DNA from: Chiloscyllium plagiosum
Taxonomy: Eukaryota
DNA length: 58,474 nt
Direction of reading: 5' to 3'
NCBI RefSeq assembly: GCF_004010195.1
Contig: NC_057726.1
Coordinates: 61,968,519 to 62,026,992 of the forward strand
Below, in pieces: positions 3,009-51,061 of this stretch. Made by a program: the position numbers and the translations under genes. The stretch's first letter is position 1. The number at the start of each line of letters is the position of its first letter. The notes under the pieces were generated by a model. It saw only the letters and a list, made by a program, of their open reading frames with translations, ran no database searches and was not told where the DNA came from.

Positions 3009-3063
3009 ATGACAGCCAATATCATTTTTCTCTGCGTGATTCTCCAAGGGATTATTCATATAG
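3009..3063 (+). CDS. Gene A exon 1, signal peptide (MTANIIFLCVILQGIIHI)
   Basis: ATG, hydrophobic 18-mer and phase-1 donor G|gtatc; joins the V exon in frame. Confidence 0.8.
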
Positions 3064-3541
3064 GTATCACTAATTTATAAAATGCTTCTGAAACATTTTT
3101 ACACGGTTTAGAGCAAGCTACTTCCTCTACCCGACTATCCCTTAACGAGGATGTGATGTAGTAGTGATAGCTAATATTCAAATAACGCGAAAGTTTTGAA
3201 ATTCAATTTGACTTCACATAGTGTGTTTGGAATATGAATCTAGAGTCAGTAAAGATGACAATGAAAAGATAGTCGATTATCATTAAGAACTAAGTAGCTG
3301 ACTGATTTCCATTCTTAACGTGAGGGAAGGAAATCTGCTATCCTTTCTTGCTCCTGACTACATGCGATCTGGAGCAATGTGACTGACTCTTAGCTTCCTT
3401 CTGAAATAGTTCAGGAAGCCTCTCAGAACCGGAGTAGTTAGGAAAGGGCAATGATGCCTTTGCTAGCTATACCCACATGCCATGATTTTTTAGAATGGTT
3501 GTTTATTTTACAATCAATATGTGTTTGCTTATTTCTGCCAG

Positions 3542-3862
3542 CTGCGGATCGCACTTCATTCACTGTATCTCAGGCACCCAAAGAAGCGAATGTATCCAGA
3601 GGAGACAATATGACTTTCTACTGCATATTTCCCCTCTCTAAAGACCAAACCTGGGTACGGGTATTATGGTGGAAACATGGTGAGAATGAATACCTACGTG
3701 TAAGCACGGACAAGAGAAAAAGATTTGGGATGGCAAGCAGAGCAAGCGGTTTCCTTCGGCTGCTGGGTGTGACAATCCAAGACGCTGGAATCTATCACTG
3801 CACCGTGATCCGTCAGGGAGAAGTTAGAGGCAATGGCACTGGATCGCGTTTAACTGTGTATG
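3542..3862 (+). CDS. Gene A exon 2, Ig V-set domain with J-like G strand
   Basis: Acceptor ccag|; VSQ, FYC, WWK, DAGIYHC and GNGTGSRLTV motifs; phase-1 donor G|gtaaat; 321 nt. Confidence 0.93.
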
Positions 3863-3987
3863 GTAAATGAATATGTTGAGCAGGGACCTTTTGAAACAGC
3901 TTTATTGTATCCTCTTTGTCAGTATAAAGGTAACTATTAATACAATTCGCGATCATGCTCCCTGTTTAAATCTACTAATTAGACAGA

Positions 3988-4117
3988 TAAAAATCACACA
4001 CCACCAGGTTATAGTTCAACTGGTTTGTTTGGCAGCACTACCTTTCCGAGCGCAGCTCCGAAAGCTAGTGATTCCAAGCAAACCTGTCAGACTATAATCT
4101 GGTATTGTGTGATTTTT
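3988..4117. repeat. Palindromic (fold-back) element made from a Penelope-like terminus
   Basis: aaaaatcacacaccaccaggttatag...ctataatctggtattgtgtgattttt are reverse complements; the same sequence starts the element at ~17745. Confidence 0.7.
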
Positions 4118-5296
4118 AACTTTGTGCACCCCGGTCCAACACCGGCACCTCGAAATCATGGCTAATTAGACATGTAGCGTCACACGCAGATTGCTACAAA
4201 ATGAACTAGTATTAATCAGTTAGAGTGGAACTGCAAAGGCAACATATGCATCAACTTAATTATCGCGAAAACTCGGAACGGTGTTCAAGTTTCTAACAGA
4301 TTGAAAGCTTTTGTGTTATTGTGTTCCTCTCCCATCACCTTTCCCAGCTACACGTATACCGCCCTGTTCCTAACTCCTCTCAGTTGTGAAGAAAGGTCAC
4401 TAGATCCGAAACTTTAACTCTTTATTTTCTCCATAGATGCTACCAGATATGCTGACTTTGCTCGCAATTTTTGTATTGTTTCTGAGCCCCTGTGTAATAC
4501 GAAATTCTGAACCATACACCTTGCTTAGGTATTTTTTAGTGCACGTTTCCGCCTACCGTTGCCTTAGTTAATCAGCATGCCTGAAATTTAATCTCACATT
4601 TTGACAGAATTGCGGAATTCAACGTCACTGAGCTGCTAATTGTCGAATAAATGATTTACCCACGATCTGGAGCTTCAAACACACGGATTGCATCACTAGC
4701 GCCCAATAAATAAAATAAACAGAGGTTCAGTTTTCCTGAAATCTCTTGGTCTTCAGCTGAATGCATTGTATTCCAACAATTGTTATGCCCCAGCTATGAG
4801 TTATTCCAAAAGCTGGTAAAGACCCCATTTTATGATGAATATTGTTGACCACATACCTCTTAGTATGTATCAAACATGTAAAGATTCATTGTGTCAACCT
4901 ATTCCCAGAAATTTCGATTTTGGACTATGGAAGCCAAACACAACGTAATAAGACTTTTCGATTGCTCTGCCGAGTAATTTAAATTTTGAAGAACTCGAAA
5001 TGTCACTTTTGTTTTCTCTCTACAGATGCTGCCAGACCTCCTGTAATTCCGTTTTTATTTATGTTAATTCAAAGTCTTGGTGTTAATAATATAGGTAAAA
5101 TTGACTCAGTCGTCGATTTCTATCTGAAGCATGGAGAGGACGCACATAAAATATGTTTAACATTAAAAAGAAAAGAGGCTGCGCCTTCGAATGCCATCTT
5201 TGTAAAAAATAAACGGTCCAAACTTAGATAAGAACAATATTTAGTTTCTCCTAAAAGCACACAGTAACTTAATTTTATTCATTCTGTGCTTTGCAG

Positions 5297-5608
5297 CGGC
5301 CCCAACACCACTAGCTATTGTCTCCGGGCTATCAGAAGGGAATTCCTCTCCATCGCTGGCTCTAAACTGTGAAACAGCTGCGTTTTATCCGGAAAATCTC
5401 ACACTCACTTGGTATAAGAATGGTGTTGAATCTGCATTCGGAATAAAGACAAGTAAAATAAAGAACACGGAGGGACTATATGAAGTTTCCAGTACTTTAG
5501 TTGAGACGCAATCTGTCCTTAGCGGCACCAATTATACCTGTTCGGTAAAACACGTCTCCCTCCTGGCGCCAGCTGTTGTCACCTGGACCGTTTGGAAATC
5601 TAATCGAG
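5297..5608 (+). CDS. Gene A exon 3, Ig C1-set domain
   Basis: Acceptor tttgcag|; LALNCETAAFYPENLTLTWYKNG...GLYEVSSTL...YTCSVKHVSL are C1 hallmarks (FYP, YxCxVxH); donor G|gtagg. Not in the ORF track because it has no start codon. Confidence 0.93.
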
Positions 5609-6332
5609 GTAGGACACGGACTTCCAAAAAAGAATGCGTAACTGTTGAATTCGTAAAGACCAATTCGGTACTTAGCGCATATTATTAAAAATGGGGATGG
5701 AGCATGGAAGTCTGAAAGAAAAGATAAACACCAACATTTACCAAATGTATGGCGCATTTCAGCCTGATGTTCTCAAAACCGGGTCATATCATTCGCCACA
5801 CAAATATTCTCAGTTAAATTTATTTAATTGCAAATTCGGCCATTGCATTTACAACATGGCAAGAATGGAAATTAAGAGCAGCAGTAGGCCTAAAAGCTTG
5901 CTGAACCTGCTTATTACCGATTTTCTGAACCAACTCCAGTCTCCAGCACGATCCCCATATTCATCGGTTGTCTTAGTGCCGCAAATGCTATAGATTGCGG
6001 TCTTTGATGGTCAGAAAGACGTTCTCTCTGGAACTGAGAATGCTAAAGATTCAGAGCGTTTGAATAAATAAATTTTCCTAATAGTAGTGCTAAATAGCCG
6101 AACTCTCAGCTTGTGAAAATAACCCGAAAGTCTAGATTCATGCCAAGGGGTAACACAAGGCTCTTCTTCTTTATGTAAACCAGACCCTATATCGCTTTTT
6201 ATTCTATGATGTTGAATGATTACAGACACAGGAATATATCTAATAAACAGTTCTTAGTCCTTTTTGCAAAAGATAAAACAGAAATTTAGCCAATTTAGCA
6301 AGTTAATATCTACATTCATGTTAATCTTGCAG

Positions 6333-6446
6333 ATATTGCCCATATGCCATTTTACTACTCGTGCCTCAGATACATGGTGGGTGGACTGGCGTTTCTATTA
6401 CTCCTGATTATCACCGGGTCGCACTGTGCAATAGAGTTTGAGAAAA
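6333..6446 (+). CDS. Gene A exon 4, transmembrane (DIAHMPFYYSCLRYMVGGLAFLLLLIITGSHCAIEFEK)
   Basis: Acceptor tcttgcag|, donor A|gtaagt, phase 1-1, hydrophobic stretch; clearly homologous to the gene B TM exon (GGLA). Confidence 0.88.
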
Positions 6447-6810
6447 GTAAGTTTAATGTGATATGTTGATTTTAATACAGATACCAGTTGGTGATAGAGT
6501 GAACGTCAACGAGTATTCCAGGGAACGATCATTATTTTTGAACCAACAGTCTCTTTTCCCGACGAGTCACTGTGCTTTTTTTTTCCCGGAAAGTAATAAA
6601 TTCTCCAGTTCAAAACACAAAATTATGTGAACAATGGATTTGATCAGCCAGATATCAGCAATTACAATGTTCACCTGCAGCAAGGACTGAATCAAATTTG
6701 ACTTTACATGCTCCGTTTGCAAACATCTATCCTGACACCGCAATTAGTTTTTGCGAGGCTTTGTGGGTGTTAGCCTTGAAATGGTTACAGAACATTGTTC
6801 GTCTCTACAG

Positions 6811-6855
6811 AGGATAGAGTTTCAGTGTTGCAGAAATCAGCATTGGAAAAAACAG
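6811..6855 (+). CDS. Gene A candidate exon 5, short cytoplasmic exon (KDRVSVLQKSALEKT)
   Basis: Acceptor gtctctacag|, weak donor ag|gttcaa; 45 nt versus 44 nt in B and C. Confidence 0.4.
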
Positions 6856-17740: not shown

Positions 17741-17741
17741 A

Positions 17742-20382: not shown

Positions 20383-20443
20383 ATGATGTCGAATGCCAAG
20401 TTTCTTTTAATTCTCCTGACGCTCCTGGACCTCACTACTGCAG
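20383..20443 (+). CDS. Gene B exon 1, signal peptide (MMSNAKFLLILLTLLDLTTA)
   Basis: Classical n/h/c signal peptide; phase-1 donor G|gtatct. Confidence 0.88.
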
Positions 20444-20617: not shown

Positions 20618-20938
20618 ATGCACCAGATTCCTCTGTGAGCATCCGTCAATCTCCCCCAAAGGCAGTTATATCAAAGGGTTCAGACATCATTCTCTACTGC
20701 ATTTTGCCCCTTTCCCATGATAATTCAGAGTTCGAGGTACGTTGGTGGAAACGGGGTGAGAATAAATTTCTGCAACCAGGAGTAGATAAAAGGAAACATA
20801 TTGGTGTCATATCTAAAGGATCTGCTAACCTGGATCTGCGAAACGCAATGCTCCAGGACTCAGGAATCTACCACTGTACAGTAATCCGTCAGGGAGCATT
20901 TTATGGAAATGGAACAGGAACTAATCTAACTGTCTGCA
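20618..20938 (+). CDS. Gene B exon 2, Ig V-set domain with J-like G strand
   Basis: Acceptor cttccag|; IRQSP, LYC, WWK, DSGIYHC and GNGTGTNLTV; donor A|gtaagt; 321 nt, same length as in gene A. Confidence 0.93.
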
Positions 20939-21634: not shown

Positions 21635-21940
21635 TTTCTCCAGCTCCAATAAAGATTTACACAAAGCCACGCAAGGACAATTCATCGAAGTCTCTGACTC
21701 TTGTGTGTCAGACGAGTGCGTTCCATCCGGGCGATTTTACTCTCGTTTGGTATAAAAATGGCACCGCAATCTCACCGGCGATAATTAAAAAACAGAACGC
21801 TGAAGGACTGTATCAAGCTTTCAGTTCTTTGGAAGAGGCGCAACCTGAGCGGACCGAAGTTGTCTACATCTGTTTGGTAATACACATCTCCCTTCGGACT
21901 CCCGCCATTGCTATCCACACTGTGACAAATACCTACTCAG
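21635..21940 (+). CDS. Gene B exon 3, Ig C1-set domain
   Basis: Acceptor tttgcag|; LTLVCQTSAFHP...WYKNG...GLYQAFSSL...YICLVIHISL; donor G|gtatga. Confidence 0.93.
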
Positions 21941-23250: not shown

Positions 23251-23994
23251 CTGACATTTTAATTTCTCGTTGTACTTTCGGTAGGTGTATTAGAATATAT
23301 CTGAAACTTCTGAATACTTCTTCAATGGATGCCATCATTCCAAACCTTCTTTGTCAATGCTTCAACCCACCAAATTTTAGTTGTTTGAATTTAATACCTC
23401 GTCTCAAATACCTCACTTTCAAACATTGTATAGACACATATATATAGACTACTAGTCACTCATCTCTCAAGATACTTTTACAGCAGGGTTATGCATCATA
23501 CCTTTTCTACATAACACGAGATGTAAAATATCGGGGTCCCCAGGTGTTTCTCAATACTGCTCCCCAGAAGACCATGCAAAACACATTCACAGCCTTAGTG
23601 ATGATTAAGTTTTCCAGTCTGTCTATAGATTGAAGTCACCAATGTGCAGACCTTTGATGCTGGGAGGCATTTTGTGCTACTAATTTCACTTGCAACCCAG
23701 GCCTGTGACACTCGTAACGGCAATCCATTCGTTCATTCCGAACCATTTTCTTTTCTGGAATTAACAAACAATGGTGTGGTAAGGCGCAAGTCTATAAGGA
23801 GAATGTCTTGATTCACCCCATTATACTCCACAATATTGAGATCGCATGTCAGTCAAATGAATACAATCCATATTTTTCTTAGCAATAGCGAAACTAATAT
23901 CAATGCATTATCACTACTTCTTCTCACCATTACCTCTCAAGCCATTGATTAGACCAGTGGAAAAGGGAATTTTCCCTTGCATATTGTTCTGGTC

Positions 23995-26683
23995 TCATGT
24001 ATCAGAAATAAGGTGGGTGAACTTAAGGTGTGGATCGGTACCTGGGACTATGATGTTGTGGCCATCACGGAAACATGGATAGAAGAGGGACAGGAATGGT
24101 TGTTGGAGGTTCCTGGTTACAGATGTTTCAGTAAGATTAGGGAGGGTGGTAAAAAAGGAGGGGTTGACGTTGCTAATTAGAAATTGTATAACGGCTGCTG
24201 AAAGGCAGTTCTTGCCTTTGGAGGTAGTATGGGCTGAAGTCAGAAACAGGAAAGGAGCAGTCACCTTGTTGGGTGTTTACTATAGGCCCCCCAATAGCAG
24301 CAGAGATGTGGAGAAACAGATTGGGAAACAAATTTTGGAAAGGTGCAGAAGCCACAGGATAGTAGTCATGGGCGATTTCAATTTCCAAATATTGATTGGA
24401 AGCTCTTTAGATCAAGTAGATTGGATGGGGTGGTGTTTGTGCAGTGTGTACAGGAAGCTTTTCGAACTCAGTATGTAGATTGTCCGACCAGAGGGGATGC
24501 CATATTCGATTTGGCACTTGGTAATGAACCGGGACAAGTGATGGGCTTGTTAATGGGTGAGCATTTTGGTGATGGTCACCACAATTCTGTGACTTTCACC
24601 TTGGTTATGGAGAGAGACAGGTGCGTGCAACAGGGTAGGTTTTACAATTGGGGGAAGGGTAAATCTGATGCTGTAAGACAGGATCTGAGGAGCATATGTT
24701 GGGAGCATAGGCTGTCAGGGAAGGATGTCGTGGAAATGTGGAACTTTTTCAAGGAACAGATACGACGTGTCCTTGATATGTATGTACCTGTCAGGCAGGA
24801 AAGAGATGGTCGTGTGAGGGAACCTTGGTTGACGAGGGAGGTTGAATGACTTGTAAAGAGGAAGAAGGAGGCTTACATAAGGTTGAGGAAACAAGGTTCA
24901 AACAGAGTGTTGGAGGGATACAGGAGCTGAAGACAGGGATTAGGAGAGCTAAGAGAGGGCATGAAAAATCTTTGGTGGATAGGATCACGGATAACCCCAA
25001 GGCATTTTATGCGTATATGAGAAACATGAGAATGACGAGAACGAGGGTAGGTCAGATCAAGGACAGTAGTGGCAGACTGTGTATTGAGTCGGAAGAGATA
25101 GGAGAGGTCTTGAATGAGTACTTTTCTTCAGTATTTACGAACGAGAGGGACCGTATTGTTGAAGAGGAGAGTGTGAAANNNNNNNNNNNNNNNNNNNNNN
25201 NNNNNNNNNNNNNNNNNNNNNNNNNNNNNNNNNNNNNNNNNNNNNNNNNNNNNNNNNNNNNNNNNNNNNNNNNNNNNNNNNNNNNNNNNNNNNNNNNNNN
25301 NNNNNNNNNNNNNNNNNNNNNNNNNNNNNNNNNNNNNNNNNNNNNNNNNNNNNNNNNNNNNNNNNNNNNNNNNNNNNNNNNNNNNNNNNNNNNNNNNNNN
25401 NNNNNNNNNNNNNNNNNNNNNNNNNNNNNNNNNNNNNNNNNNNNNNNNNNNNNNNNNNNNNNNNNNNNNNNNNNNNNNNNNNNNNNNNNNNNNNNNNNNN
25501 NNNNNNNNNNNNNNNNNNNNNNNNNNNNNNNNNNNNNNNNNNNNNNNNNNNNNNNNNNNNNNNNNNNNNNNNNNNNNNNNNNNNNNNNNNNNNNNNNNNN
25601 NNNNNNNNNNNNNNNNNNNNNNNNNNNNNNNNNNNNNNNNNNNNNNNNNNNNNNNNNNNNNNNNNNNNNNNNNNNNNNNNNNNNNNNNNNNNNNNNNNNN
25701 NNNNNNNNNNNNNNNNNNNNNNNNNNNNNNNNNNNNNNNNNNNNNNNNNNNNNNNNNNNNNNNNNNNNNNNNNNGAGGGAGTCGGAGGGTGGGTCAGTAA
25801 ATTTGCAGATGATACGAAGATTGGTGGAGTTGTGGATAGTGAGGAGGGCTGTTGTCGGCTGCAAAGGGACTTAGATATGATGCAGAGCTGGGCTGAGGAG
25901 TGGCAGATGGAGTTCAACCCTGTCAAGTGTGAGGTTGACATTTTGGAAAGACAAATAAGAATGCGGAATACAGGGTTGACGGTAGGGTTCTTAGTAAGGT
26001 GGAGGAGCAGAGCGATCTTGGGGTCTATGTTCATAGATCTTTGAAAGTTGCCACTCAGGTGGATAGAGCTTGTAAGAAGGCCTATGGTGTATTAGCGTTC
26101 ATTAGCAGAGGGATTGAATTCAAGAGTCGTGAAGTGATGTTGCAGCTATACAGGACCTTGGTTCGGCCACATTTGGAGTACTGTGTGCAGTTCTGGTCGC
26201 CTCACTTTATGAATGATGTGGAAGCTTTGGAGGGGATGCAGAGAAGATTTACCAGGATGTTGCCTGGAATGGAGAATAGGTCGTACGAGGATAGGTTGAG
26301 AGTGCTAGGCCTTTTCTCATTAGAACGGTGAAAGATGAGGGGTGACTTGATAGAGGTGTATAAGATGATCAGGGGAATAGATAGAGTAGACAGTCAGAAA
26401 CTTTTTCCCCGGGTACAACAGAGTGTTACAAGGGGACATAAATTTAAGGTGAAGGGTGGAAGGTATAGGGGGGATGTCAGGGGTAGGTTCTTTACCCAGA
26501 GAGTGGTGGGGGCATGGAATGCGCTGCCTGTGGGAGTAGCAGAGTCAGAATCATTGGCGACCTTTAAGCGGCAATTGGATAGGTACATGGATGGGTGCTT
26601 AAGCTAGGACAAATGTTCGGCACAACATCGTGGGCCGAAGGGCCTGTTCTGTGCTATATTGTTCTATGTTCTATGTTCTATGT
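23995..26683 (+). mobile_element. Relatively young CR1 LINE ORF2 (APE + RT) with (TTCTATG)n tail, in gene B intron 3; contains assembly gap 25179-25774
   Basis: DVVAITETW, GVYYRPP, VMGDFN, KFADD and RPHLEYCVQFWSP; a few frameshifts and stops; heptamer tail at ~26660-26683. Confidence 0.95.
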
Positions 26684-26880: not shown

Positions 26881-26991
26881 ATCTCAATGATAAATATCAG
26901 TTTATCTGGATGTCTGGATATGTGATGGGTGGACTGGCAATTCTGGTATTCATCATCGTTGTTGGGATCAAAATCTGTTCAAAAAATGACG
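26881..26991 (+). CDS. Gene B exon 4, uncharged transmembrane (DLNDKYQFIWMSGYVMGGLAILVFIIVVGIKICSKND)
   Basis: Acceptor tcttgcag|, donor G|gtaggt, phase 1-1; homologous to the gene A TM exon. Confidence 0.9.
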
Positions 26992-29065: not shown

Positions 29066-29109
29066 GTAAAAAAGAAAATGTAACAACTGTGAATTCTTAT
29101 GATGAGCAG
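29066..29109 (+). CDS. Gene B exon 5, cytoplasmic (GKKENVTTVNSYDEQ)
   Basis: Acceptor ttttgccag|, strong donor CAG|gtaagc; 44 nt, phase 1 to 0, exactly what is needed to join the TM exon to the ITIM exon. Confidence 0.82.
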
Positions 29110-29619: not shown

Positions 29620-29742
29620 CCGGTTGCGACCCAAAACGTGATTTATACTGCAGTAGATTTGAAAAACACCAATAAAACTTCAAGAGCTCGAGATGACCAA
29701 GACGCGACAGCGTACGCTCAAGTGAAGCTCAGAAGTTCATAA
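29620..29742 (+). CDS. Gene B exon 6, cytoplasmic tail with ITIM (VIYTAV) and ITSM (TAYAQV)
   Basis: Acceptor ccttcttgtctcatgcag|; PVATQNVIYTAVDLKNTNKTSRARDDQDATAYAQVKLRSS*; spliced CDS is 966 nt = 321 aa + stop. Confidence 0.9.
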   Translation, partial: PVATQNVIYTAVDLKNTNKTSRARDDQDATAYAQVKLRSS

Positions 29743-30367
29743 AGGAAATGTTGATGCCCCGTGAAAAACCGATAATCATACTACAGCAGAGTGTTTGAAG
29801 ATTCTGTGTCTTTCATAGTGCATTGTCTCTAAAGCTTCATGTAATTCTGATGAATGCATTGAGCTGGACTCAGAAATTGCAAAATCAATGAATCAACAAT
29901 ACTTTCAAACGTCGGTTGTTCATGTAAAGCAGGGGACTGGTCTAATAAGGTAACATATTTGACTCCAGAATTCTCTGGATTTGAGAAATCCGAACAAACT
30001 ACAGAGAGACAAAAAAACTAAGGAAGCATAGAATTTGTCGAGAAAATCCAAAGCAGTCAAGACAGTTTACAGAGAATCAGTAACTGAAGGGCGCTGCAAT
30101 CTTGAGTGCACAAAACCGTTGTTCTTGTTTCACAAACCGTGACTTGTTTCATATTATTCCATTTGCGATGGAATTGACACCTGACGTGCTATGAGTGAGC
30201 CCGGGATCCGCACTGACAGTTTAGCTCTTTTAAAATGAAGGCATAAATTGTCCCCCTGCGTGTATCCAATTATTGAGATGTAGGACATTTGAACGCTATA
30301 GAATGTAAAACAGCCATTGCGGTTTTAAATTATTTTGTAATTATTAGTCAGCTATATACATACTTAC

Positions 30368-30373: not shown

Positions 30374-33300
30374 AATTGCTTTCAATATAAATCTGCATTG
30401 AAACATATTTACAAAGTCGTACTATTATATACTTACTGTCATGCTGCGTCTACATTTTATCATGCACACGAATAGATTCCTTCCTTCTAGTTCCAAATCG
30501 ACCTTAATGCAACGTGTATTTTCTTTCAGAGAACGCAAGAACAGAAAATTGTATTTGAACTTCATAAATTATGTCACAGCGTCCGATTTTCATTCAGGGC
30601 GATCGTCCTGGTTTAGAAATAAAGCATTTCCCTCCATAATCTGAGTGAAGCTTATTTCTCAATGACACGTACACAGCTGAGCTCTGGGTTGGCTTGCCAT
30701 TTCATTTGGAAACATTATTGCTAGTCTTTGCGTATTCGAGTATAATCTTGTGGCTTCCATAATACGCAACAGGCCGTTAACTTCAACTAAGAGAAGGGTT
30801 CTGAAAGAAATAATGAGAAGTTATTCGGGGTATTATAAATTAATGAATGAGAAAACGTGCTAAACTAATTACATCCTCGTTGTAGAAAATAAAACACATC
30901 AAATTGTTACTTTAATGTTTCATGGTCTGTCAATTAATGCATGTAGGTTTTTGTTGTGAACCATTTCTTCTATTACTGAGTCTGGTGCCAGAAATGCTAT
31001 AAAGCAGGGTTCAAAATATTGAGTTGAGTCTAAGTTGGGAGTAACTTGACTAATTTATATGACCAGGCATTACTGCAGCTAGTGAGGGGAGGAAATTAGC
31101 CAACTAGGCCAGAAGATTAAATATATTTAGGGCCTGATTTTTAACTTTCTGTGGATGAATAGATTCTGTGACAGCTTAAGTTTGACTCTAACTTGAAAAA
31201 AAAAGCAAATTATGTAAATAGTTGGCTAATGCTTTAGGTACGGTTATCACTGGTTCGTTATTGAATCTGTGTAATACCGAAAAAGGAATATATGTGCAAT
31301 ACCAAGTATTTTAAAGACTAAGACCACGACAGCATTGAGGTAAAAACAATGACTGCAGATGCTGGAAACCAGATTCTGGATCAGTTGTGCTGGAAGAGCA
31401 CAGCAGTTCAGGCATAGAACCCAGCTATTCTTTTGGTAGACATTGCGCCATTGCTTGTATCCACGTGAAACACAGTGTTAAATAATTTGTCCTGCAACTT
31501 ATCTTCACAATATTTGATATTATCTCTGCCATGCAATTACTTTCGACTAAGAAATGTATTTTTAAGCAATATAATCAGCATACGGATTCACGTTCACACA
31601 CACCCGTGGCATGTAGGAAGAGTGCGGTAATTCTTTACCATGAAATTTCTGAAATTGACAACTACTGCCACTGTTCATGCGACAACTGTAATATTTAAAC
31701 AATTGATTGCAATCTTGAAAACAATTATGTGCTTATGCATTAATCTTCTCAGCGCCATTATGGTGACAATGATAGCTTGGGCGTTGTTGGAACTGCACTG
31801 ATTCAGGCAATGACTTGTACCTTGCAGATGGTGAACATGCTTTGGGAAGTCCGGTGGCAAGTTACTTCTGTCAGGATTTCTAGATGTGACCCGCTCTTGA
31901 AGCTATTACAATTATATGTTAGCCCCAATTCACTTTTTGGTAACTCCCATGAAGTTGGTGGTGGGGAGTGCAGTAATGCCAACGCCATTGAATATTAAGC
32001 AGACGGGGAAGCAGAGTGATTAGATTGTCTCTTCTCCACGATGGTCTTATTGAAGATGTTTTTTTGCTTGGTATTTAAGTGCATGAATGTTACTTGCCAG
32101 TTTTCAGGCCAAGCCTGGATATCGTCCTGGTCTCGTTGCATATGTGCATGGAATGCTATTTGCCTATTGCAGTATCTGAATGTTTCCTTTAGTGCAGCAT
32201 TTATGGCTAGGAATCAATTATAGTCCAAGTAAAGTTTAGTATGATGTTACCTTTGCAATTTTTAAATACTGTACACCTCGAACAAAAATGGACTCGAATT
32301 TGGGGAGACTATTTTTTGCATTTTACAGTGAATACTATTACAGAATAATGCATGTAGGCAGAAAGGTAATTTCAACAGTCAGCAATTTAAACCAAACACT
32401 TAAGTTTTTCACTTTTAACTTTAAAGATGAACCTTTTCAGGCATTCTTTCTACTTTATACAGCTTTGATTAACCGTTAATCCCGCAATGAATGTGTTCAT
32501 CTGCAGGATTTCACATTCGCCATATTCCACTTTTCAGTAGATGATAGATTCACACTTATGGAAATTCCTGAATTCTCGTGTACCAATGACTTATATAGCT
32601 TGTAAGTAAAAGCAATAGAGAATCAGGCAGCTATTGCATCAATTATTTCCATGTCAAATCTCCTACTTTTATCATTGTGCTTTGTTTCTATGCCTCAACC
32701 TTATTATTTTGTGATCAATTGTAGCGAATATTTCCGTTCGAAATTCCATGCAATCACACCTGGGAATTCTTGCCTTGTCGCTTCCCTCTGCTATTGTTTC
32801 AAGTAATATCTAGTTTCATCGAAGAGAAATCAAGTGCACTGTATTTCAAAAAAAAGTCTGCCGGTTGCTCTTGATAAACTTGTGCTTGTAGAAGTGTTTG
32901 GAAATTTTTGTCGAGTTTGTGGCCGGGCCCGTCAAATATAAATAAACAATTTTGTCACTACATATTTAAAAATAAATGTTGCCACATTCGTTAAACATTC
33001 TTTTGAAAACTAGGTGACAGGTTCTTGAGAAGTGGAAAAGATAATGAGTAAACGACTAACTAAAGTTTCCATCTTATTTTGTTCCATAATAAGCATTGCA
33101 AAATGTGAAGGCACGTTTGTGGGTTGTCGAGGCTAAGTCAAGAATATGACTTGATAACTCATTTCTGGTGAGCCAGTGCTAATTTTAACTTACATGCTAA
33201 TTGCAACACTCTGAAAATATAATGTTTGCAAAGCGATGGCTATTCCACCTCACAGTTCAATGCAATCATATAAGCAGATGTTTATTTTAAACAGCAATTA

Positions 33301-39094: not shown

Positions 39095-39149
39095 ATGGCT
39101 GTGAAGGCTGTGTTTCAGAGTATACAGCTCATAAAGATTATTTTCATTG
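39095..39149 (+). CDS. Gene C exon 1, leader (MAVKAVFQSIQLIKIIFI)
   Basis: 55 nt as in gene A; phase-1 donor G|gtatgt; weaker hydrophobic core. Confidence 0.7.
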
Positions 39150-39242: not shown

Positions 39243-39557
39243 TTGCTGCTGATGTTCCTGTTGAAGTGTCCCAGATCCCCGAACGTATCTATGCCACAAC
39301 TGGCACAAACCTCACATTCTATTGCACGTTTTCTGTTTTTCAAGACAAACAGGCGATCATTTATTGGTGGAAACTTGGTGAAAATGAATTCATTCATTTT
39401 GGATCAGACAACAGGAAACGACTTTTCATCGAGAAAGGAAGAGCCTCATTACAACTCCTGAATATCAGTGTCCAAGACTCTGGAGTCTATTATTGCAGAC
39501 TGACATGCCCGGGAAAAAGAGCCGCAAATGGAAGTGGATCAACACTTGTCGTCCGTG
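39243..39557 (+). CDS. Gene C exon 2, Ig V-set domain with J-like G strand
   Basis: Acceptor ttttcttttacag|; VSQIP, FYC, WWK, ASLQL, DSGVYYC and ANGSGSTLVV; donor G|gtaaga. Confidence 0.93.
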
Positions 39558-41696: not shown

Positions 41697-42011
41697 CTTC
41701 TCCAACTCCAGTGAGGATTGTTTCCCGTCCCTCTGAAAGTACTGCGCACAGTTCTTTGTCTTTGGTATGTGAAATGGATTTGGTTTTCCTGGACGGTCTG
41801 ACTATCACTTGGTACAAAAATAATCGAAGCATTGAGAATGGGATAAATACGACCACGAAGCAACTCAGTGGAGCAGGGCTGTATAAAGTTTCAAGCTATT
41901 TGGAAGAAGCACGGCCTATCCAAGGAAGAACTGTTTTTGTCTGTCTGATGTCTCAAGCGACCCTACAGATTCCAGCCATGGCCATTTACTTGGTCCCTAT
42001 TTCTCGTCTAG
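41697..42011 (+). CDS. Gene C exon 3, divergent Ig C1-set domain
   Basis: Acceptor caccag|; LSLVCEMDLVFLDGLTITWYKN...GLYKVSSYL...FVCLMSQ; donor G|gtaaga; colinear with the A and B C1 exons. Confidence 0.9.
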
Positions 42012-42159: not shown

Positions 42160-43400
42160 AACGAGGAGGTCATGCCTGATCAACCTAATTTAATTTTGCA
42201 AAGAGGTGAAAATATATGCAGACAACGACAATGCTTTTGATACACTCTATTCCGATTTCAGCTACGTTTTGATGCAATCCCGCACGGGAAAGTGGAAGAA
42301 AGTATAGCAGATCATTGGATCCAAGGAAATTTGGCAAATTGGGTCCATAATTAGCTGACAAGCAAGGAGCAGATAGTTATGGCTGACAGGCGTTTTTCCA
42401 ATTGAAAACCTGAGTTCAATGGGGTCCCACACGGATCGGTGTGAGGCCCCTGCAGTTTCTGTTTATGTAAATGATTTAAACTTTAATGTATGAGGGTTGA
42501 TCAATAAGTTCACAGATAATACGAAAAAGACGGTGGAAGGTAAATATTAAGTAGGGTTACTTTAGATTACACAAGGCTATGGACGAACTGGTCAGATGAG
42601 ATGATCAGTGAGAAGTGGAACTCAATCCAGAAAAATGCATGCTGATGTAATTGGACAGGACAGGCAAGGCAGGGAATACATTGTAAAAGGTGGGACCCTA
42701 CGAAGCATTGAGGATCAGATGGTATGCTTGTTACGCACATACACTAGCCACTTAAGTTTTAGGGCAGCGAATTGATGAATTGATTAAGAAGGCATTTGGT
42801 GTATTTGCTGTTGATAGCCAAGGCGTAAATTTAAAAACAGGGAAGGTATTCTGGAACTATATAAAATTGTTCGTTCGCCACAGCTAGTGTATGATATGCA
42901 GTTCTGGATTCCACATTATAGGAGGGATGTGATTGTACAGGAGACGATGCAGAGAAGATATACCATGATATTGCTTGGACTGCAGAGTTTCAGTTATGAG
43001 ACAGATTGGACAGACTGGGATGTTTTCTTAGAGCAAGTGAAATTGAGAAGGGACTTGACTGAGATTTATAAAATTAGGAGGGGTACGGATAGGGTAAAAG
43101 GAGGAAGAAACTGTTCCAATTAATGGAGCGATCACTGAATGGGGGTAGGGAGAGTGGGTGGAGCAAATAGATTTAAGCTAAGAAGCAGAAGGTTTAGACC
43201 AGATGTGAGGGGAAAAAAGCGTTTTCACCAGAAGGTGGGGGAAATTTGGAATTCACTGACTGTAAGTGTGGTAGAGATAGAAACCCTCATAAAATTTAAG
43301 AAGTATGTGGATATATACTGTACTTGCAAAGGCATATGAGACTTTTGGTTAAGTGCTGGAAATTGTGATTTTAATAGTTAAGTAGTTATTCCTTACTGGC
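42160..43400 (+). mobile_element. Degenerate CR1 LINE (RT + 3' end) in gene C intron 3
   Basis: ggggtcccacacggatcggtg (GVPxGSV), QFWIPHYRRDV and LRRDLTEIYKI. Confidence 0.85.
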
Positions 43401-43809
43401 ATGAACACGTAAAGCCTTCTTTTATTTTATAGATCTCAATAATTGTATGGCAACATCACATTTCATTGTCTGCTGCTGAATGAGTCGGTGCTAGGAATTA
43501 CACTGCAGTAATAACCATGGAAACTAAGCATTACCTGAGTTTGCAAAATCTGTTCAGTATAACAAGTGCTTCACCCTAGTCCTAATTTCCAGAACAGTTA
43601 GGTTCGCAATTTTTGACAGACCATATCCTCTGAACTAGTTACATCAAGACATACCTAACATAATAAAACTCCACAAAGGCATGCTTTGATAGAATTCCAC
43701 ATGATGACAAAGGGGAGTACAACTTGAAGGAATTAACTCGTGAAACATTGAAAAAAAGCTTAATTGTCATAGATAGCACCATTTCTGAAAGTGAGTATTA
43801 ATGTTGCAG

Positions 43810-43926
43810 ACGATGACAACATATTTCGCACTTACGTACGGATCTTTGCATGCGCAGGATTTGTACTGATGTTTTTGGCACTGCTGGCTATCATTAGAAT
43901 GTGGCACATATTCACTAACCACAAAG
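43810..43926 (+). CDS. Gene C exon 4, transmembrane (DDDNIFRTYVRIFACAGFVLMFLALLAIIRMWHIFTNHK)
   Basis: Acceptor gttgcag|, donor G|gtaaga, phase 1-1, hydrophobic stretch. Confidence 0.88.
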
Positions 43927-44057
43927 GTAAGATATCATACTATCATTTAACGGAAACCATTCAAAAACTAACAGAAGTTGTGAAATACAATATTGCTTTA
44001 ATATTGGTATGAGTGTAAAGGTATATTTTCTTAGTTTTTACTTCTTTTACAACCAAG

Positions 44058-44335
44058 TGTTCAATTCACGCCTCAGGCGACTGACTGTGTGGAGTTTGCA
44101 CATTCTCCCCGTGTCTGCGTGGGTTTCCTCCGGCTGCTCCGGCTTCCTCCTACAATCCAAAAATGTGCAGGCTAGGTGAATTGGCCATGCTAAATTGCCC
44201 ATAGTGTTAGGTGAAGGGGTATGTGAAGGGAAGGTGAAGGGGAGTGGGTCTGGGTGGGTATGCGCTTCGGCGGGTCGGTGTGGACTTATTGGGCCGAAAG
44301 GCCTGTTTCCACACTGTAAGTTGTACAATCTAAAA
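44058..44335 (+). mobile_element. 5'-truncated HE1-like SINE
   Basis: Near-identical to the body of 45969-46308. Confidence 0.85.
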
Positions 44336-44565
44336 AGTCGGAAGTCTGCTTTCGGGGATCTGTGTGATCAAATACACTAAGAGAAACATTTATCCAACAT
44401 TTTTATCCACGTTATAGACAGAAATTGAGTCAGTAATTTTGCTCCCATTTGCTAACCAATGGAAGAGTAGATATGTCTTACTTTGCCCTGACTGTAAATT
44501 GACATTTACTATATAGTACTTGCGGAATCATTTCTTGCAATAACATGTGGAATTTTGTGTTTTAG

Positions 44566-44609
44566 CAAACAGACAGGGAAACGATGAAGCAAGCCATTGT
44601 GGCAACTCT
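44566..44609 (+). CDS. Gene C exon 5, cytoplasmic (ANRQGNDEASHCGNS)
   Basis: Acceptor ttttgtgttttag|, donor |gtaagt; 44 nt, phase 1 to 0, same size as gene B exon 5. Confidence 0.82.
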
Positions 44610-45136
44610 GTAAGTTTATACCTATCCTACATTTTAAGTACAAGCAATTATTTCCATATGGCTATTGGAAGGTGAAACTCCACACCTGAAAATCTGGACA
44701 TTTTATTCATATACAATGTGAAAGAAGGCAACAACGTTTTCAAAAAAGTAAATGAAGAGTTTAGAAAAGACGGGTGAATAGGGCTAAATAGATGCCTGAT
44801 ACTAAGAACATGGAAAGAACATCGAGGCAATGTTCCACGATTCTCGCACAATATCAACCACATGACTCGTGAAACAGTGATGAACATTAAATATCGTGCA
44901 TTCAGAACAATGTTCTAATGATGGCAAACTAAATTAGCAGTGATCATGAATTTAGGACAATCTATTTGAAAGCACACATTTTTGAGAAGGATGCTAATTA
45001 GATGAATTTAACTAAATGACATTAAGTTTGATGCAATAACAAAACTAAACAAACTTTATGATTTCTGTATTACTTTAATACGCTTTCTGTGATATATTCT
45101 ATTGCATAGTTGAGCTAATTTTATCAATTTTTTTAG

Positions 45137-45274
45137 ACTTTTCAAGAAACAATTGATAATTCGTTGACTTATGCCACTGTCCAGCCAGTTAGTTCTATGA
45201 AAAATGGAAATCCAAGGACGAAAGAAAAAGGCACAGAATATGCAGAAATTAGGAATGTACATCAAAAGAGATAA
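45137..45274 (+). CDS. Gene C exon 6, cytoplasmic tail with ITIM (LTYATV) and ITSM (TEYAEI)
   Basis: Acceptor ttttttag|; TFQETIDNSLTYATVQPVSSMKNGNPRTKEKGTEYAEIRNVHQKR*; spliced CDS is 984 nt = 327 aa + stop. Confidence 0.9.
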   Translation, partial: TFQETIDNSLTYATVQPVSSMKNGNPRTKEKGTEYAEIRNVHQKR

Positions 45275-51060: not shown

Positions 51061-51061
51061 T

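What the first reader, a model, noticed from the sequence alone, without database searches (positions are those of the whole stretch)
3009..45274. Tandem family of non-rearranging VJ-C1 (antigen-receptor-like) paired immune receptors in a probable shark
Seen: three co-oriented genes share the plan leader-V-C1-TM-short exon-terminal exon with phase-1 domain junctions. The V exon already contains the J-type di-glycine G strand, and the second domain is C1-set. Established: C1-set domains are largely restricted to Ig, TCR, MHC, b2m, tapasin, SIRP and some B7-family proteins; a single V(J)+C1+TM is the architecture of a TCR chain; germline V-J continuity occurs in NKp30, CD8b, CD28/CTLA4, SIRP and teleost NITRs. 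Inference: these genes combine a TCR-chain-like ectodomain with innate-style signalling (ITIM/ITSM, or a TM Arg). That would make them a paired NK/myeloid receptor system resembling the hypothesised pre-RAG precursor of antigen receptors. I cannot tell whether this family has already been named.
Basis: partly seen in the sequence, partly recalled or inferred. Interest (0 to 1): 0.92.

Follow-up and report, generated by a model that had tools for sequence, protein, structure and literature searches.

The report
Shark VJ-C1 paired receptor gene cluster
Three neighbouring bamboo-shark genes encode membrane receptors built like one chain of a T-cell receptor but made without gene rearrangement; they belong to a large family found in sharks, rays and chimaeras that databases label inconsistently.

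Summary
The window is from Chiloscyllium plagiosum. It carries three co-oriented paralogues, A, B and C. Each has a leader exon, a single-exon V domain that already contains the J-like G strand, one C1-set exon and a transmembrane (TM) exon. All 12 of these exons have AG/GT sites and phase-1 junctions. B, and probably C, continue with a 44-base exon and a terminal ITIM+ITSM exon. A has an Arg at the start of its TM helix and no detectable tail exon. The assembly gap lies inside a LINE in B's C1-TM intron.

The genes are not unique. They are three old lineages of a family that I found in 16 cartilaginous-fish species. NCBI labels its members variously as SIRP-alpha-like, tapasin-related-like, Ig-lambda-like or CD276 homologue. 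Family-wide, a basic residue at the TM start goes with short tails that lack tyrosine motifs, which fits inhibitory and activating forms. The nearest solved non-antibody relatives are shark UrIg2 and SIRP-alpha.

I could not read Kinlein 2021 on the shark NCR3 family, which may already name this family. The scan has noted the same kind of gene many times elsewhere in this genome. Interest is moderate.

The parts
3009..3063 (+). Gene A leader exon (MTANIIFLCVILQGIIHI + 1 base)
   Evidence: ATG, hydrophobic core, GT donor, phase 1. The leader resembles those of family proteins P0161, P0169 and P0081.
3542..3862 (+). Gene A V(J) exon, 321 bases
   Evidence: Pfam V-set 36.7 bits. AG/GT, phase 1-1. 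G strand reads GNGTGSRLTV inside the exon. 70% identical to the first V of P0160 from Scyliorhinus torazame.
5297..5608 (+). Gene A C1-set exon, 312 bases
   Evidence: Pfam C1-set 47.7 bits. FYP...W...YTCSVKH hallmarks are present. PDB best matches are Ig constant domains and UrIg2.
6333..6446 (+). Gene A stalk/TM exon with Arg at the TM start (SCLR|YMVGGLAFLLLLIITG). If its donor is unused, the reading frame stops at 6467-6469.
   Evidence: 64.5% identical over 31 residues to P0013 of Scyliorhinus canicula, which has the same Arg and a 5-residue tail. AATAAA at 6595. No tail exon was found downstream.
20383..20443 (+). Gene B leader exon
   Evidence: Identical to the start of XP_043563364.1 (P0005).
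20618..20938 (+). Gene B V(J) exon, 321 bases
   Evidence: Pfam V-set 42.0 bits. AG/GT, phase 1-1. Identical to the V of P0005.
21635..21940 (+). Gene B C1-set exon, 306 bases
   Evidence: Pfam C1-set 39.1 bits. Splice sites.
23953..26604 (+). LINE fragment in gene B's C1-TM intron. It holds the assembly gap 25179-25774.
   Evidence: ORFs. Exo_endo_phos_2 E 0.0012 on the left and RVT_1 E 0.0003 on the right, both below Pfam cut-offs. The right flank is 55% identical to the RT-like N-terminus of the fused model P0022.
26881..26991 (+). Gene B stalk/TM exon. It has no basic residue at the TM start: Gly (GGA) stands where gene A has Arg (AGA).
   Evidence: 77.6% identical over 58 residues to P0019 of C. 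punctatum.
29066..29109 (+). Gene B short cytoplasmic exon, 44 bases, takes phase 1 to phase 0 ((G)KKENVTTVNSYDEQ)
   Evidence: 13 of 15 residues match P0019. AG and GTAAGC sites. Top candidate of my splice-site scorer.
29620..29742 (+). Gene B terminal exon: ITIM VIYTAV, ITSM-like TAYAQV, stop
   Evidence: Aligns to the tail units of more than 30 family proteins.
29926..30042 (+). Decayed second tail unit behind gene B's stop (VTYLTP..., with an internal stop)
   Evidence: tblastn to P0026, P0155 and P0172, E 0.07-0.17, so weak.
30491..30613 (+). Alternative last exon used by the C. punctatum model instead of the ITIM exon. It is followed by a stop and by AATAAA at 30618. It may be only 3' UTR.
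   Evidence: 85% identical over 41 residues to P0019. Sequence context. AATAAA.
39095..39149 (+). Gene C leader exon
39243..39557 (+). Gene C V(J) exon, 315 bases
   Evidence: Pfam V-set 32.0 bits. Splice sites. 59% identical to the second V of P0160.
41697..42011 (+). Gene C C1-set exon, 315 bases. Its hallmarks are weakened: VFLDG stands for FYP and CLMSQ for CxVxH.
   Evidence: Pfam C1-set 36.8 bits. Alignment.
43810..43926 (+). Gene C stalk/TM exon, with Arg directly before the hydrophobic core (YVR|IFACAGFVLMFLALLAII)
44566..44609 (+). Gene C candidate short exon, 44 bases as in gene B. Inferred only.
   Evidence: Best-scoring AG...GTAAGT interval of the right phase between the TM and terminal exons. 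The same scorer ranked gene B's homology-backed short exon first.
45137..45274 (+). Gene C terminal exon: ITIM LTYATV, ITSM TEYAEI, stop
   Evidence: Aligns to the last tail unit of more than 35 family proteins, best E 1.4e-05.

Best explanation
What the genes are. A, B and C are three anciently diverged members of a multigene family of cartilaginous fish. The family encodes non-rearranging type I membrane receptors. Each has a signal peptide, one V domain with a germline J-like G strand (VJ), one C1-set domain, a short stalk, a TM helix and a cytoplasmic tail.

How they most likely work (inferred, not shown). The V domain binds an unknown cell-surface ligand.
- Long-tailed members carry an ITIM plus an ITSM-like motif. 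Gene B is one, and gene C is one if its last two exons are used. After tyrosine phosphorylation such motifs would recruit SH2 phosphatases and inhibit the cell.
- Members with an Arg at the outer end of the TM helix and a short tail without motifs would pair with an acidic-TM, ITAM-bearing adaptor and activate. Gene A is one, and gene C may also be made in such a form.

In this respect the family works like the SIRP family and other paired receptors. By sequence it sits among the non-rearranging VJ-C1 genes (UrIg2, SIRP). It is not a TCR or an Ig.
For: Shown.
- Exon structure, phases and open frames.
- V-set and C1-set above Pfam cut-offs in 6 of 6 domain exons.
- The J-like strand lies inside the V exon and there is no RSS.
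- ITIM/ITSM exons in B and C.
- Arg (AGA) in A where B has Gly (GGA).

Family size and range.
- The V profile found 1418 representatives at E<=0.001, 286 at E<=1e-10 and 20 at E<=1e-30.
Of those 112, 93 also have a C1.
- The named hits come from 16 species, covering sharks, rays and a chimaera.

Age of the three lineages.
- In the V tree of 95 rows, A falls in a 15-row clade (SH-aLRT 96), B in a 6-row clade (98) and C in a 12-row clade (98). Each clade holds both sharks and rays.
- The S. torazame model P0160 fuses an A-type V to a C-type V-C1-TM. This suggests the A and C types are neighbours there too.

Paired forms.
- Of 59 rows with a TM helix: basic residue and no motif 16; basic residue with motif 3; no basic residue with motif 28; no basic residue and no motif 12. 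The basic state changes at least 14 times on the tree.
- Gene A's TM is 64.5% identical to a catshark protein with the same Arg and a 5-residue tail.

Nearest relatives.
- The family profile against PDB ranks UrIg2 2nd, SIRP-alpha 6th (V plus first C1 in one stretch) and SIRP-gamma 27th of 12030.
- The ESM Atlas puts clusters named SIRP-alpha nearest by features, at 0.97.
- The SIRP layout and its alpha/beta signalling are taken from passages of PMC12975943.
Against: - The public relatives are predicted models, some clearly fused or truncated (P0160, P0019, P0022).
- Gene A's tail is unknown.
- Gene C combines the Arg with an ITIM/ITSM exon, which does not fit a clean activating/inhibitory split. 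Its C1 has lost the FYP and His hallmarks.
- The Arg sits at the TM boundary, so it could be a plain juxtamembrane residue.
- The link between a basic residue and a motif-less tail is not significant once relatedness is allowed for. There are 10 independent pairs, 7.3 going the same way against 1.2 the other way, with a median sign-test p of 0.07. Fisher's p of 0.00018 ignores relatedness. Truncated models could also inflate the count of tails without motifs.
- A and B V domains are only 49% identical, far less than in classical paired receptors.
- Ligand, adaptor and cell type are all unknown.
Confidence: 0.72

Rival explanations
1. The genes are members of the 'shark NCR3 (NKp30) family' already described in nurse shark (Kinlein et al. 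2021, Immunogenetics; GenBank MT914154-MT914161). If so, the finding is already known under that name. This is a rival on naming and novelty, not on mechanism.
For: - PMC12227049 uses eight nurse-shark 'NCR3 genes' as non-rearranging VJ genes (passages).
- PMC10751288 groups NKp30 with UrIg as 'nonrearranging AgRs' in a legend about 'VJC1-IgSF' precursors (passages).
- By predicted structure, the V domain of family member P0026 is nearest, after one unnamed Ig cluster, to a cluster named 'natural cytotoxicity triggering receptor 3-like' (TM 0.87).
- Relatives include V-TM forms without a C1, which is NKp30's layout.
- An N-x-T sequon sits in the G strand, and NKp30 has a site at Asn-121 (passage of PMC12272517). 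That this site lies in NKp30's G strand is my recollection.
- An Arg at the TM start that pairs with CD3-zeta is NKp30-like (for the TM charge pairing; the position is recalled).
Against: - Human NKp30 is absent from the best 60 PDB matches in all three V-domain searches. TCR-alpha, CD79b, VNAR and PD-L1 are present.
- None of the source names seen for family proteins is NCR3 or NKp30. Several are 'NCR3 ligand 1-like', which is a different thing.
- The scan's MHC notes for this genome are on other pieces, whereas shark NCR3 is called MHC-linked.
- I could not read the paper or fetch its sequences.
Confidence: 0.45
2. The genes are true orthologues or co-orthologues of the SIRP family of bony vertebrates. 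An ancestral one-C1 form would later have gained a second C1.
For: - NCBI's commonest label is SIRP-alpha-like, written as tyrosine-protein phosphatase non-receptor type substrate 1-like.
- SIRP-alpha ranks 6th and SIRP-gamma 27th of 12030 PDB matches. The SIRP-alpha alignment covers V plus the first C1 in one stretch.
- Atlas clusters named SIRP-alpha score 0.97, sharing 208-209 of 256 features.
- SIRPs also have ITIM and basic-TM members and V-only splice forms (passages of PMC12975943). The same is seen here.
Against: - All three genes here have one C1 rather than two. Only 3 of the 112 family-scoring proteins show two or more C1 hits, and some of those may be fused models.
- SIRP is not among the best 60 matches for the V domain alone.
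- Automatic names follow the best database hit and are inconsistent here.
- No bony-vertebrate protein appeared among the strong hits. In one search the best 32 hits are all chondrichthyan, and the first outsider is a multi-V turtle protein at 26% identity.
- No tree with SIRPs and no synteny could be made.
Confidence: 0.2
3. One or more of the three genes are untranscribed or decaying copies, and the apparent 'pair' is an accident of decay. In particular, gene A would have lost its tail exons and gene C would have a degenerating C1.
For: - No tail exon was found for A in about 13 kb downstream.
- C's C1 lacks the FYP and His hallmarks that its catshark counterpart keeps.
- A decayed tail unit lies behind B's stop.
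- NCBI's model of B stops after the C1.
- There is no RNA evidence.
Against: - All 12 core exons are open with intact splice sites.
- A's Arg-bearing TM and short tail recur in a catshark protein (64.5% identity over 31 residues). Short-tailed Arg forms recur at least 14 times on the tree.
- C's terminal exon keeps both motifs and a strong acceptor.
- B's truncated NCBI model is explained by the gap and the LINE in its intron.
Confidence: 0.15
4. The family would be a direct surviving image of the membrane-bound, pre-RAG antigen-receptor precursor, closer to TCR/Ig than UrIg, UrIg2, SIRP or NKp30 are.
For: - The layout is VJ-C1-stalk-TM. Gene A adds a membrane-proximal Cys, a TM Arg and a short tail, as in a TCR chain.
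- The best V-domain PDB matches that include the J strand are TCR alpha/beta, VNAR and the amphioxus IgVJ-C2.
- For the V part of P0026, the nearest Atlas cluster by features is named 'putative Antigen receptor' (0.95).
- The family spans chimaeras to rays, so it dates at least to the chondrichthyan ancestor.
Against: - No TCR chain is among the best 60 matches of the V-C1 profile, whereas UrIg2 and SIRP-alpha are.
- The canonical F/W before GxG is missing. An N-glycan sequon stands there instead, which may not suit V-V pairing.
- No linkage to the Ig/TCR complex or the MHC was shown.
- No rooted tree was made.
- The literature already puts forward UrIg2 as the candidate (abstract and sections 4 and 7 of PMC12227049).
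Confidence: 0.1

Closest known systems
SIRP family (SIRP-alpha, -beta, -gamma) of mammals
   Same: Both have an N-terminal V domain with a J-like G strand followed by C1-set domain(s), a TM helix, inhibitory members with tyrosine motifs, activating members with a basic TM residue and short tail, and V-only splice forms (passages of PMC12975943). By sequence, SIRP-alpha ranks 6th of 12030 PDB matches to the family profile, and Atlas features score 0.97.
   Different: These genes have one C1 where SIRPs have two. The basic residue is an Arg at the outer TM boundary, whereas my recollection (not checked here) is that SIRP-beta has a Lys within the TM. The family is much larger and only cartilaginous fish were found to have it. 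CD47 binding, DAP12 pairing and synteny were not tested.
UrIg and UrIg2 (non-rearranging shark VJ-C1 genes; PMC12227049)
   Same: Both are from cartilaginous fish, have a single-exon VJ domain with a split leader, and have C1-type domains. UrIg2 (PDB 9dmx) is the best non-antibody match to the family profile (rank 2, E 8.8e-34) and ranks 3rd for gene A's C1 alone.
   Different: UrIg has three C1 domains and is secreted. UrIg2 has nine or more C1 domains plus a TM (sections 4 and 7). The word ITIM does not occur in that paper. UrIg and UrIg2 are each described there as one gene, whereas these genes belong to a clustered multigene family with one C1 and signalling tails.
NKp30 / NCR3, including the nurse-shark NCR3 family (Kinlein 2021, not readable here)
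   Same: Both have a non-rearranging VJ-type V domain and a TM charge that pairs with an adaptor. Structural likeness of the V domain to an 'NCR3-like' Atlas cluster is TM 0.87. Relatives without a C1 have NKp30's layout.
   Different: Mammalian NKp30 has no C1 and no ITIM. Human NKp30 is not among the best 60 PDB matches of the V domain. The MHC linkage of NCR3 was not seen for this window (unchecked notes).
TCR and Ig light chains
   Same: Both have one V(J) domain plus one C1 domain per chain. V matches run through the J strand (TCR alpha 2.8e-07 and TCR beta 1.2e-06; TCR scFv 1.7e-11). Gene A has a stalk Cys, a TM Arg and a short tail.
   Different: These genes have no RSS and no separate J segment. 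The motif is N-G-T-G rather than F/W-G-x-G. B and C carry ITIM/ITSM tails. No TCR chain is in the best 60 of the V-C1 profile search.
Other joined-VJ receptors: CD79b, CD8-beta, CTLA4/PD-1, NITR, PRARP
   Same: [quoted passage not shown] CD79b matches the V-TM profile through V, stalk and TM (E 2.9e-10). CTLA4-like, CD79a, PD-1 and CD8B clusters are structural neighbours of the V domain.
   Different: As I recall, none of these has a C1-set domain after the V. The PRARP paper (Fu 2019) is not held, so its layout is recalled only.

Membership tests
SIRP family | N-terminal V-set domain with a J-like G strand | tested here: met
   V-set in 3 of 3 V exons. The GxG strand lies inside the exon.
SIRP family | [quoted passage not shown] | tested here: not met
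   Each of A, B and C has one C1 exon. No further V or C1 match was found in the six-frame translation of the window (the C1 model in that call was partly built in wrong frames; exon reading agrees). 3 of 112 family proteins show two or more C1 hits.
SIRP family | Paired signalling: ITIM-bearing members, and members with a basic TM residue and a short tail | tested here: met
   B and C have ITIM/ITSM exons. A has a TM Arg. Family table 16/3/28/12 of 59 rows. These are motifs only; no signalling was shown.
SIRP family | Phylogenetic grouping with SIRPs and conserved synteny | tested here: inconclusive
   SIRP-alpha ranks 6th and SIRP-gamma 27th of 12030. Atlas score 0.97.
SIRP family | Binding of CD47; DAP12 association of the beta form | not testable with these tools
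   Needs experiments.
NKp30 / NCR3 family | Single VJ-type V domain, short stalk, TM; no C domain (mammalian form; passage of PMC12272517) | tested here: not met
   All three genes have a C1 exon. 19 of 112 family proteins lack a C1 hit. Some of these are isoforms of C1-bearing genes (P0089/P0090, P0126/P0084).
NKp30 / NCR3 family | TM charge that pairs with CD3-zeta | tested here: inconclusive
   Arg at the TM start in A and C but not in B. The adaptor is unknown.
NKp30 / NCR3 family | V domain groups with NKp30 V domains | tested here: inconclusive
   Human NKp30 is not in the best 60 PDB matches in 3 of 3 V searches. An 'NCR3-like' Atlas cluster is the second structural neighbour (TM 0.87).
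NKp30 / NCR3 family | Identity with the nurse-shark NCR3 genes MT914154-MT914161; MHC linkage | not testable with these tools
   The paper is not held and the sequences could not be fetched. MHC notes are on other pieces (unchecked).
UrIg / UrIg2 | VJ exon followed by three (UrIg, secreted) or nine or more (UrIg2, TM) C1 domains | tested here: not met
   One C1 exon per gene.
UrIg / UrIg2 | Sequence kinship of the V and C domains | tested here: inconclusive
   UrIg2 ranks 2nd of 12030 for the family profile and 3rd for A's C1. No tree was made.
Rearranging antigen receptors (TCR, Ig) | Separate V and J segments flanked by RSS | tested here: not met
   V and the J-like strand are in one exon. 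There is no RSS-like site in or beside the V exons.
PRARP (Fu et al. 2019) | Layout and phylogeny as defined in that paper | not testable with these tools
   The paper is not held. PMC10751288 and PMC11599192 name it only as a VJ gene. No hit carried that name.

The most novel reading that the evidence does not exclude
The family is an undescribed, pan-chondrichthyan set of membrane-bound, non-rearranging VJ-C1 receptors. Its short-tailed, TM-Arg members are built like a single TCR chain. Its long-tailed members carry ITIM/ITSM, and the two forms have interconverted many times. It would be the membrane-receptor counterpart of UrIg/UrIg2 and a sister of SIRP and NKp30. It would therefore be the best living model of how a signalling VJ-C1 receptor looked before RAG split the V exon.
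Probability: 0.3. Interest if true: 0.75.

Novelty: new member of a known kind. Interest (0 to 1): 0.5.

Why it matters
Non-rearranging genes that join a VJ-type V domain to a C1 domain are the raw material in current models of how antibodies and T-cell receptors arose. UrIg and UrIg2 in sharks are the cases now discussed (PMC12227049). The family seen here adds what those lack: one C1, a TM helix, and either an inhibitory tail or an adaptor-type TM Arg. That combination brings it closer in layout to a TCR chain and in logic to SIRP or NKp30.

If the family is not yet described, it gives a testable system, covering ligands, adaptors and dimerisation, for how a VJ-C1 receptor signalled before RAG. 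If it is the published shark NCR3 family, this window is routine annotation. Its use would then be to correct NCBI's truncated model of gene B and the inconsistent automatic names.

Tried and rejected
RNA evidence. The look-up of sequencing runs listed DNA holders of 'organism B', two raw single-cell RNA runs and two doubtful RNA rows. No reads were laid, so the gene models rest on sequence and homology alone.

Exon-only homologue search. Gene B's V exon found nothing within the tool's length limits. This says nothing about longer relatives, and the representative search found them.

No model, no fold search and no test of V-C1 geometry or dimer interfaces was possible.

Linkage to the MHC, to B7H6-like genes or to SIRP neighbours therefore remains untested.

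Trees with outgroups. I could not obtain SIRP, NKp30, TCR, UrIg or PRARP sequences as stored proteins, so I made no tree that tests family membership. The V tree holds only family members, the window's exons and three reptile V domains as outgroup. Rows dropped before the tree were: proteins over 520 residues; V hits under 70 bits or covering fewer than 85 model positions; and 14 of 109 rows with identical V sequences. Gene B's V was dropped as identical to P0005.

Literature. None returned a paper that describes a V-C1-TM-ITIM family in cartilaginous fish, and none of six accession or locus names of family members occurs in the library. This is weak evidence of absence. Not held were Kinlein 2021 (PMC8273117), Fu 2019, Flajnik 2012 (PMC3709836), Ohta & Flajnik 2015 (PMC4594805) and Flajnik 2023 (PMC10530332). 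I did not ask for the supplements of PMC12227049 or PMC10751288 (gene tables, alignments). They may list NCR3 copies and map positions that bear on novelty.

Ideas considered and dropped.
- A 34-base 'intron' after gene A's TM exon, ending the protein ...EFEKNTSW. This is too short for a vertebrate intron.
- An upstream acceptor at about 29587 that would join B's TM exon straight to a longer terminal exon. I dropped it in favour of the homology-backed short exon.
- Fossil tail exons of gene A at 6811-7980 and of an upstream paralogue at 261-359, both from the scan's notes. I saw no convincing match.
- Shared origin of the LINE pieces in the C1-TM introns of B and C. They are only about 48% identical at the protein level, so I take them as separate insertions.
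- The first local C1 and TM models were built partly in wrong frames. They were rebuilt.

Full report
What is there. The window is 40% G+C vertebrate DNA with two runs of N, at 13792-13794 and 25179-25774. Open stretches on the + strand show three V-like and three C1-like exons. I fixed the exon borders by reading the splice sites and then by script.
- Gene A: leader 3009-3063, V 3542-3862, C1 5297-5608, TM 6333-6446.
- Gene B: leader 20383-20443, V 20618-20938, C1 21635-21940, TM 26881-26991.
- Gene C: leader 39095-39149, V 39243-39557, C1 41697-42011, TM 43810-43926.
All 12 exons end at a GT, and all 9 internal exons follow a pyrimidine-rich AG. Leaders leave one base over, and the domain and TM exons are multiples of three, so every junction is phase 1. 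Pfam puts V-set first for 3 of 3 V exons and C1-set first for 3 of 3 C1 exons, all above the curated cut-offs.

VJ character. Each V exon runs on through Y-x-C, a CDR3-like loop and N-G-[TS]-G-[ST]-x-L-x-V before the donor site. The GxG bulge of a J segment is therefore germline-joined. The F/W that precedes GxG in Ig/TCR J segments is replaced by Asn, which makes an N-glycan sequon in all three genes. The J consensus FGxGTx(L/V)xV is quoted in PMC11599192 (passage). A loose scan for heptamer-12/23-nonamer signals found 3 sites in the whole window and none in or next to a V exon.

Tails. B's terminal exon (29620-29742) reads ...NVIYTAVDL...TAYAQVKLRSS-stop. C's (45137-45274) reads ...LTYATV...TEYAEIRNVHQKR-stop. 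Both start in phase 0 while the TM exons end in phase 1, so a 3n+2 exon must lie between them.
- For B this exon is 29066-29109 (44 bases). It matches 13 of 15 residues of the Chiloscyllium punctatum model GCC26423.1 (P0019) and has AG and GTAAGC sites.
- A simple splice-site scorer ranks that exon first in B. In C it ranks a 44-base exon at 44566-44609 first. That exon is inferred only.
- The C. punctatum model skips the ITIM exon and ends in a different exon, equivalent to 30491-30613 here, which is followed by AATAAA at 30618. I cannot tell whether this is a real isoform or a piece of 3' UTR.
- Behind B's stop lies a decayed second tail unit at 29926-30042 (weak matches).
- For gene A, tblastn with all family proteins found nothing after the TM exon. 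If the TM exon's donor is not used, the frame stops at 6467-6469, giving a 16-residue tail, with AATAAA at 6595.

TM segments. A reads SCLR|YMVGGLAFLLLLIITG and C reads YVR|IFACAGFVLMFLALLAII. B has Gly (GGA) where A has Arg (AGA).

The gap. N 25179-25774 lies in B's C1-TM intron, inside a LINE. Endonuclease-like ORFs lie to its left and an RT piece with the FADD motif to its right. The Pfam hits are weak and below cut-off: Exo_endo_phos_2 at E 0.0012 and RVT_1 at E 0.0003. The two flanks are co-oriented and in the order expected of one element, but the gap length is an estimate, so frames cannot be compared. No coding exon is expected in the gap, because A and C have none between C1 and TM. 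That B's exons on the two sides belong together is supported by P0019, which joins a B-type C1 to this TM exon (77.6% identity over 58 residues). NCBI's own model of B (XP_043563364.1, P0005) stops by read-through after the C1.

Origin and relatives. P0005 is identical to gene B's leader, V and C1, and it names the organism as Chiloscyllium plagiosum.
- A profile of the three V exons, run against 1.84 billion representatives, gave 1418 hits at E<=0.001, 286 at E<=1e-10 and 20 at E<=1e-30.
- By my local V model, 72 of the 150 listed proteins are family members (at least 70 bits).
- Named members come from 16 species: C. plagiosum, C. punctatum, Stegostoma, Heterodontus, Heptranchias, Carcharodon, two Scyliorhinus, Mustelus, Amblyraja, Pristis, Hypanus, Hemitrygon, two Mobula and the chimaera Callorhinchus.
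- In one search, 33 of 50 hits are chondrichthyan, including the best 32. Of the other 17, 13 are reptile proteins, mostly multi-V, at 22-30% identity. One is a whitefish V-C model, two are invertebrate proteins and one is unnamed. In one search all 20 hits are chondrichthyan.
- The automatic names disagree: SIRP-alpha-like (the commonest), SIRP-beta-1-like, tapasin-related-like, CD276 homologue, Ig lambda-1-like, MHC class I or II chain-like, NCR3 ligand 1-like, and uncharacterised. No source calls any of them NCR3, NKp30 or PRARP.
- The scan's own notes (unchecked) list many more such genes in this genome. On the same piece they lie at -456 kb, +16 kb, +30 kb, +229 kb, +7.0 Mb and +7.3 Mb, and there are others on other pieces. 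So the scan has found this before on other DNA.

Age of A, B and C. In a V-domain tree of 95 rows (quick IQ-TREE, SH-aLRT support), A sits in a 15-row clade (96) with Scyliorhinus, Mustelus, Heterodontus, Heptranchias and ray sequences. B sits in a 6-row clade (98) with Mustelus, Heterodontus, Hemitrygon and Mobula. C sits in a 12-row clade (98) with S. torazame, Heptranchias, Mustelus and others. The three genes are therefore old paralogues that predate the shark-ray split. This fits their low identity to one another (V 38-49%, C1 36-42%). The S. torazame model P0160 fuses an A-type V with a C-type V-C1-TM, which hints that the A and C types are neighbours there too. With 106 columns for 95 rows, many forks are unresolved.

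Inhibitory and activating forms. Among 59 tree rows with a recognisable TM helix, the counts are:
- basic residue at the TM start and no [SIVLT]xYxx[ILV] motif in the tail: 16;
- basic residue with a motif: 3;
- no basic residue with motifs: 28;
- no basic residue and no motif: 12.
Most of the 16 have tails of 5-17 residues and the form R|hydrophobic core, often ending in -IIVD or -IIVE. Gene A's TM is 64.5% identical over 31 residues to S. canicula P0013, which has the same Arg and a 5-residue tail. The basic state changes at least 14 times on the tree.

The test that allows for relatedness is not significant. It uses 10 independent pairs, with 7.3 going the same way against 1.2 the other way, and gives a median p of 0.07. 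Fisher's p of 0.00018 ignores relatedness, and truncated gene models may add false tails without motifs. Some genes also have predicted isoforms that skip the C1 (P0089/P0090, P0126/P0084), as SIRPs have V-only variants. Gene C is odd in carrying both the Arg and an intact ITIM/ITSM exon. Its catshark counterpart has the Arg and a tail without motifs.

What it is closest to.
- V domain alone. The PDB matches that run through the J strand are TCR alpha/beta, VNAR and the amphioxus IgVJ-C2. PD-L1 matches the body of the domain, and CD79b matches V, stalk and TM of the V-TM forms. Human NKp30 and SIRP are in none of the three best-60 lists.
- C1 alone. It matches Ig constant domains and UrIg2.
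- Whole family profile (22 full-length relatives, alignment A2). The best non-antibody chains are UrIg2 V-C1-C2-C3 (rank 2, E 8.8e-34), SIRP-alpha (rank 6, E 4.4e-30, one stretch over V and the first C1) and SIRP-gamma (rank 27) of 12030 matches. The remaining rows are immunoglobulin chains or constructs by their names, and no TCR chain is listed.
- ESM Atlas, whole family member P0026. The nearest clusters by features are named SIRP-alpha (0.97).
- ESM Atlas, V part of P0026. The nearest cluster by features is a 'putative Antigen receptor' cluster. By predicted structure the neighbours are an 'NCR3-like' cluster (TM 0.87), then CTLA4-, CD79a-, PD-1-, TCR-alpha- and CD8-beta-like clusters.
These Atlas results are leads, not tests.

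Reading. The genes are members of a cartilaginous-fish family of non-rearranging VJ-C1 membrane receptors. They work, by inference from motifs, like SIRPs or other paired receptors. ITIM/ITSM tails would recruit SH2 phosphatases. Short-tailed forms would pair through the TM Arg with an ITAM adaptor. My recollection, not tested here, is that an Arg at the outer end of the helix fits CD3-zeta or FcR-gamma better than DAP12. The family fails the membership test for SIRP on the number of C1 domains, for mammalian NKp30 on having a C1, for UrIg/UrIg2 on C1 number and tails, and for TCR/Ig on lacking RSS.

Novelty. [quoted passage not shown] For PMC12227049 I read the abstract, sections 4 and 7, and passages. 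For PMC10751288 I read passages only. Eight nurse-shark NCR3 genes exist in GenBank, but the paper that describes them is not held. I put the chance that they are this family at about 0.45. I recall that human NKp30's V domain resembles these V domains at its start and in the glycosylated G strand. That is memory, not a result. My ten searches found no paper on a V-C1-TM-ITIM family in cartilaginous fish (see Tried and rejected), but key papers and all supplements were out of reach.

I therefore file the finding as a new member of a known kind (paired VJ-type IgSF receptors, SIRP/NCR3-like) with moderate interest. I keep open, at about 0.3, the reading that this is an undescribed TCR-chain-like family relevant to antigen-receptor origins.

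Limits. There is no structure model, no synteny and no tree with outgroup families. My own spliced models were never joined for a search. Each exon was searched apart.

Noticed in passing
window 23953-26604 (+), 42605-43336 (+), 11589-12340 (-), 17327-17746 (+), 48082-48330 (+), 51029-51556 (-): There are many fragments of one kind of LINE/RT element, with the recurring motif ...RFTRMLPG...LGLFSLE.RRL.GDLIEVYK. Two sit in the C1-TM introns of genes B and C. Those two are only about 48% identical at the protein level, so they are probably separate insertions.
   Followed up: partly
window 29926-30042 and 30491-30640: Behind gene B's stop lie a decayed second ITIM/ITSM unit and then an open exon-like stretch. 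A C. punctatum gene model uses that stretch as its last exon instead of the ITIM exon. A poly-A signal follows at 30618. This may be an alternative tail without motifs, or it may be only 3' UTR.
   Followed up: partly
window 41697-42011: Gene C's C1 domain has lost the FYP motif and the His of CxVxH. The catshark counterpart P0160 keeps both (FHP, VSH). This could reflect relaxed constraint or a changed partner surface.
   Followed up: no
window 13712-13906 and 18050-18480: These are low-complexity stretches. The first is a purine-rich microsatellite around a 3-base N run (13792-13794). The second is a TG/CA-rich repeat that gives long spurious ORFs on both strands.
   Followed up: no
window 48265-50716 (-) and 54528-55816 (+): ORFs with retroelement-like pieces lie downstream of the receptor cluster, in opposite orientations. 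One shared motif is ...FINFT..FHPDLKFTW... No cellular gene was recognised between 45.3 kb and the end of the window.
   Followed up: no
proteins P0011, P0024, P0036, P0109, P0137, P0184-P0193 (reptiles): Turtles and lizards have receptors with two to four tandem V domains, each ending in a J-like NGTG/GNGT strand, plus a TM and an ITIM/ITSM tail. They are the nearest non-chondrichthyan hits to this family's V domain (22-30% identity). NCBI labels them PIGR-like, FCRL5-like or DSCAM-like.
   Followed up: no
protein P0197 (Coregonus): A whitefish model shows two repeats of a germline-joined VJ (...GNGSNLIV / GNGTTVIV) followed by a C-type domain. It may be another non-rearranging VJ-C gene, or it may be a mis-joined model.
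   Followed up: no
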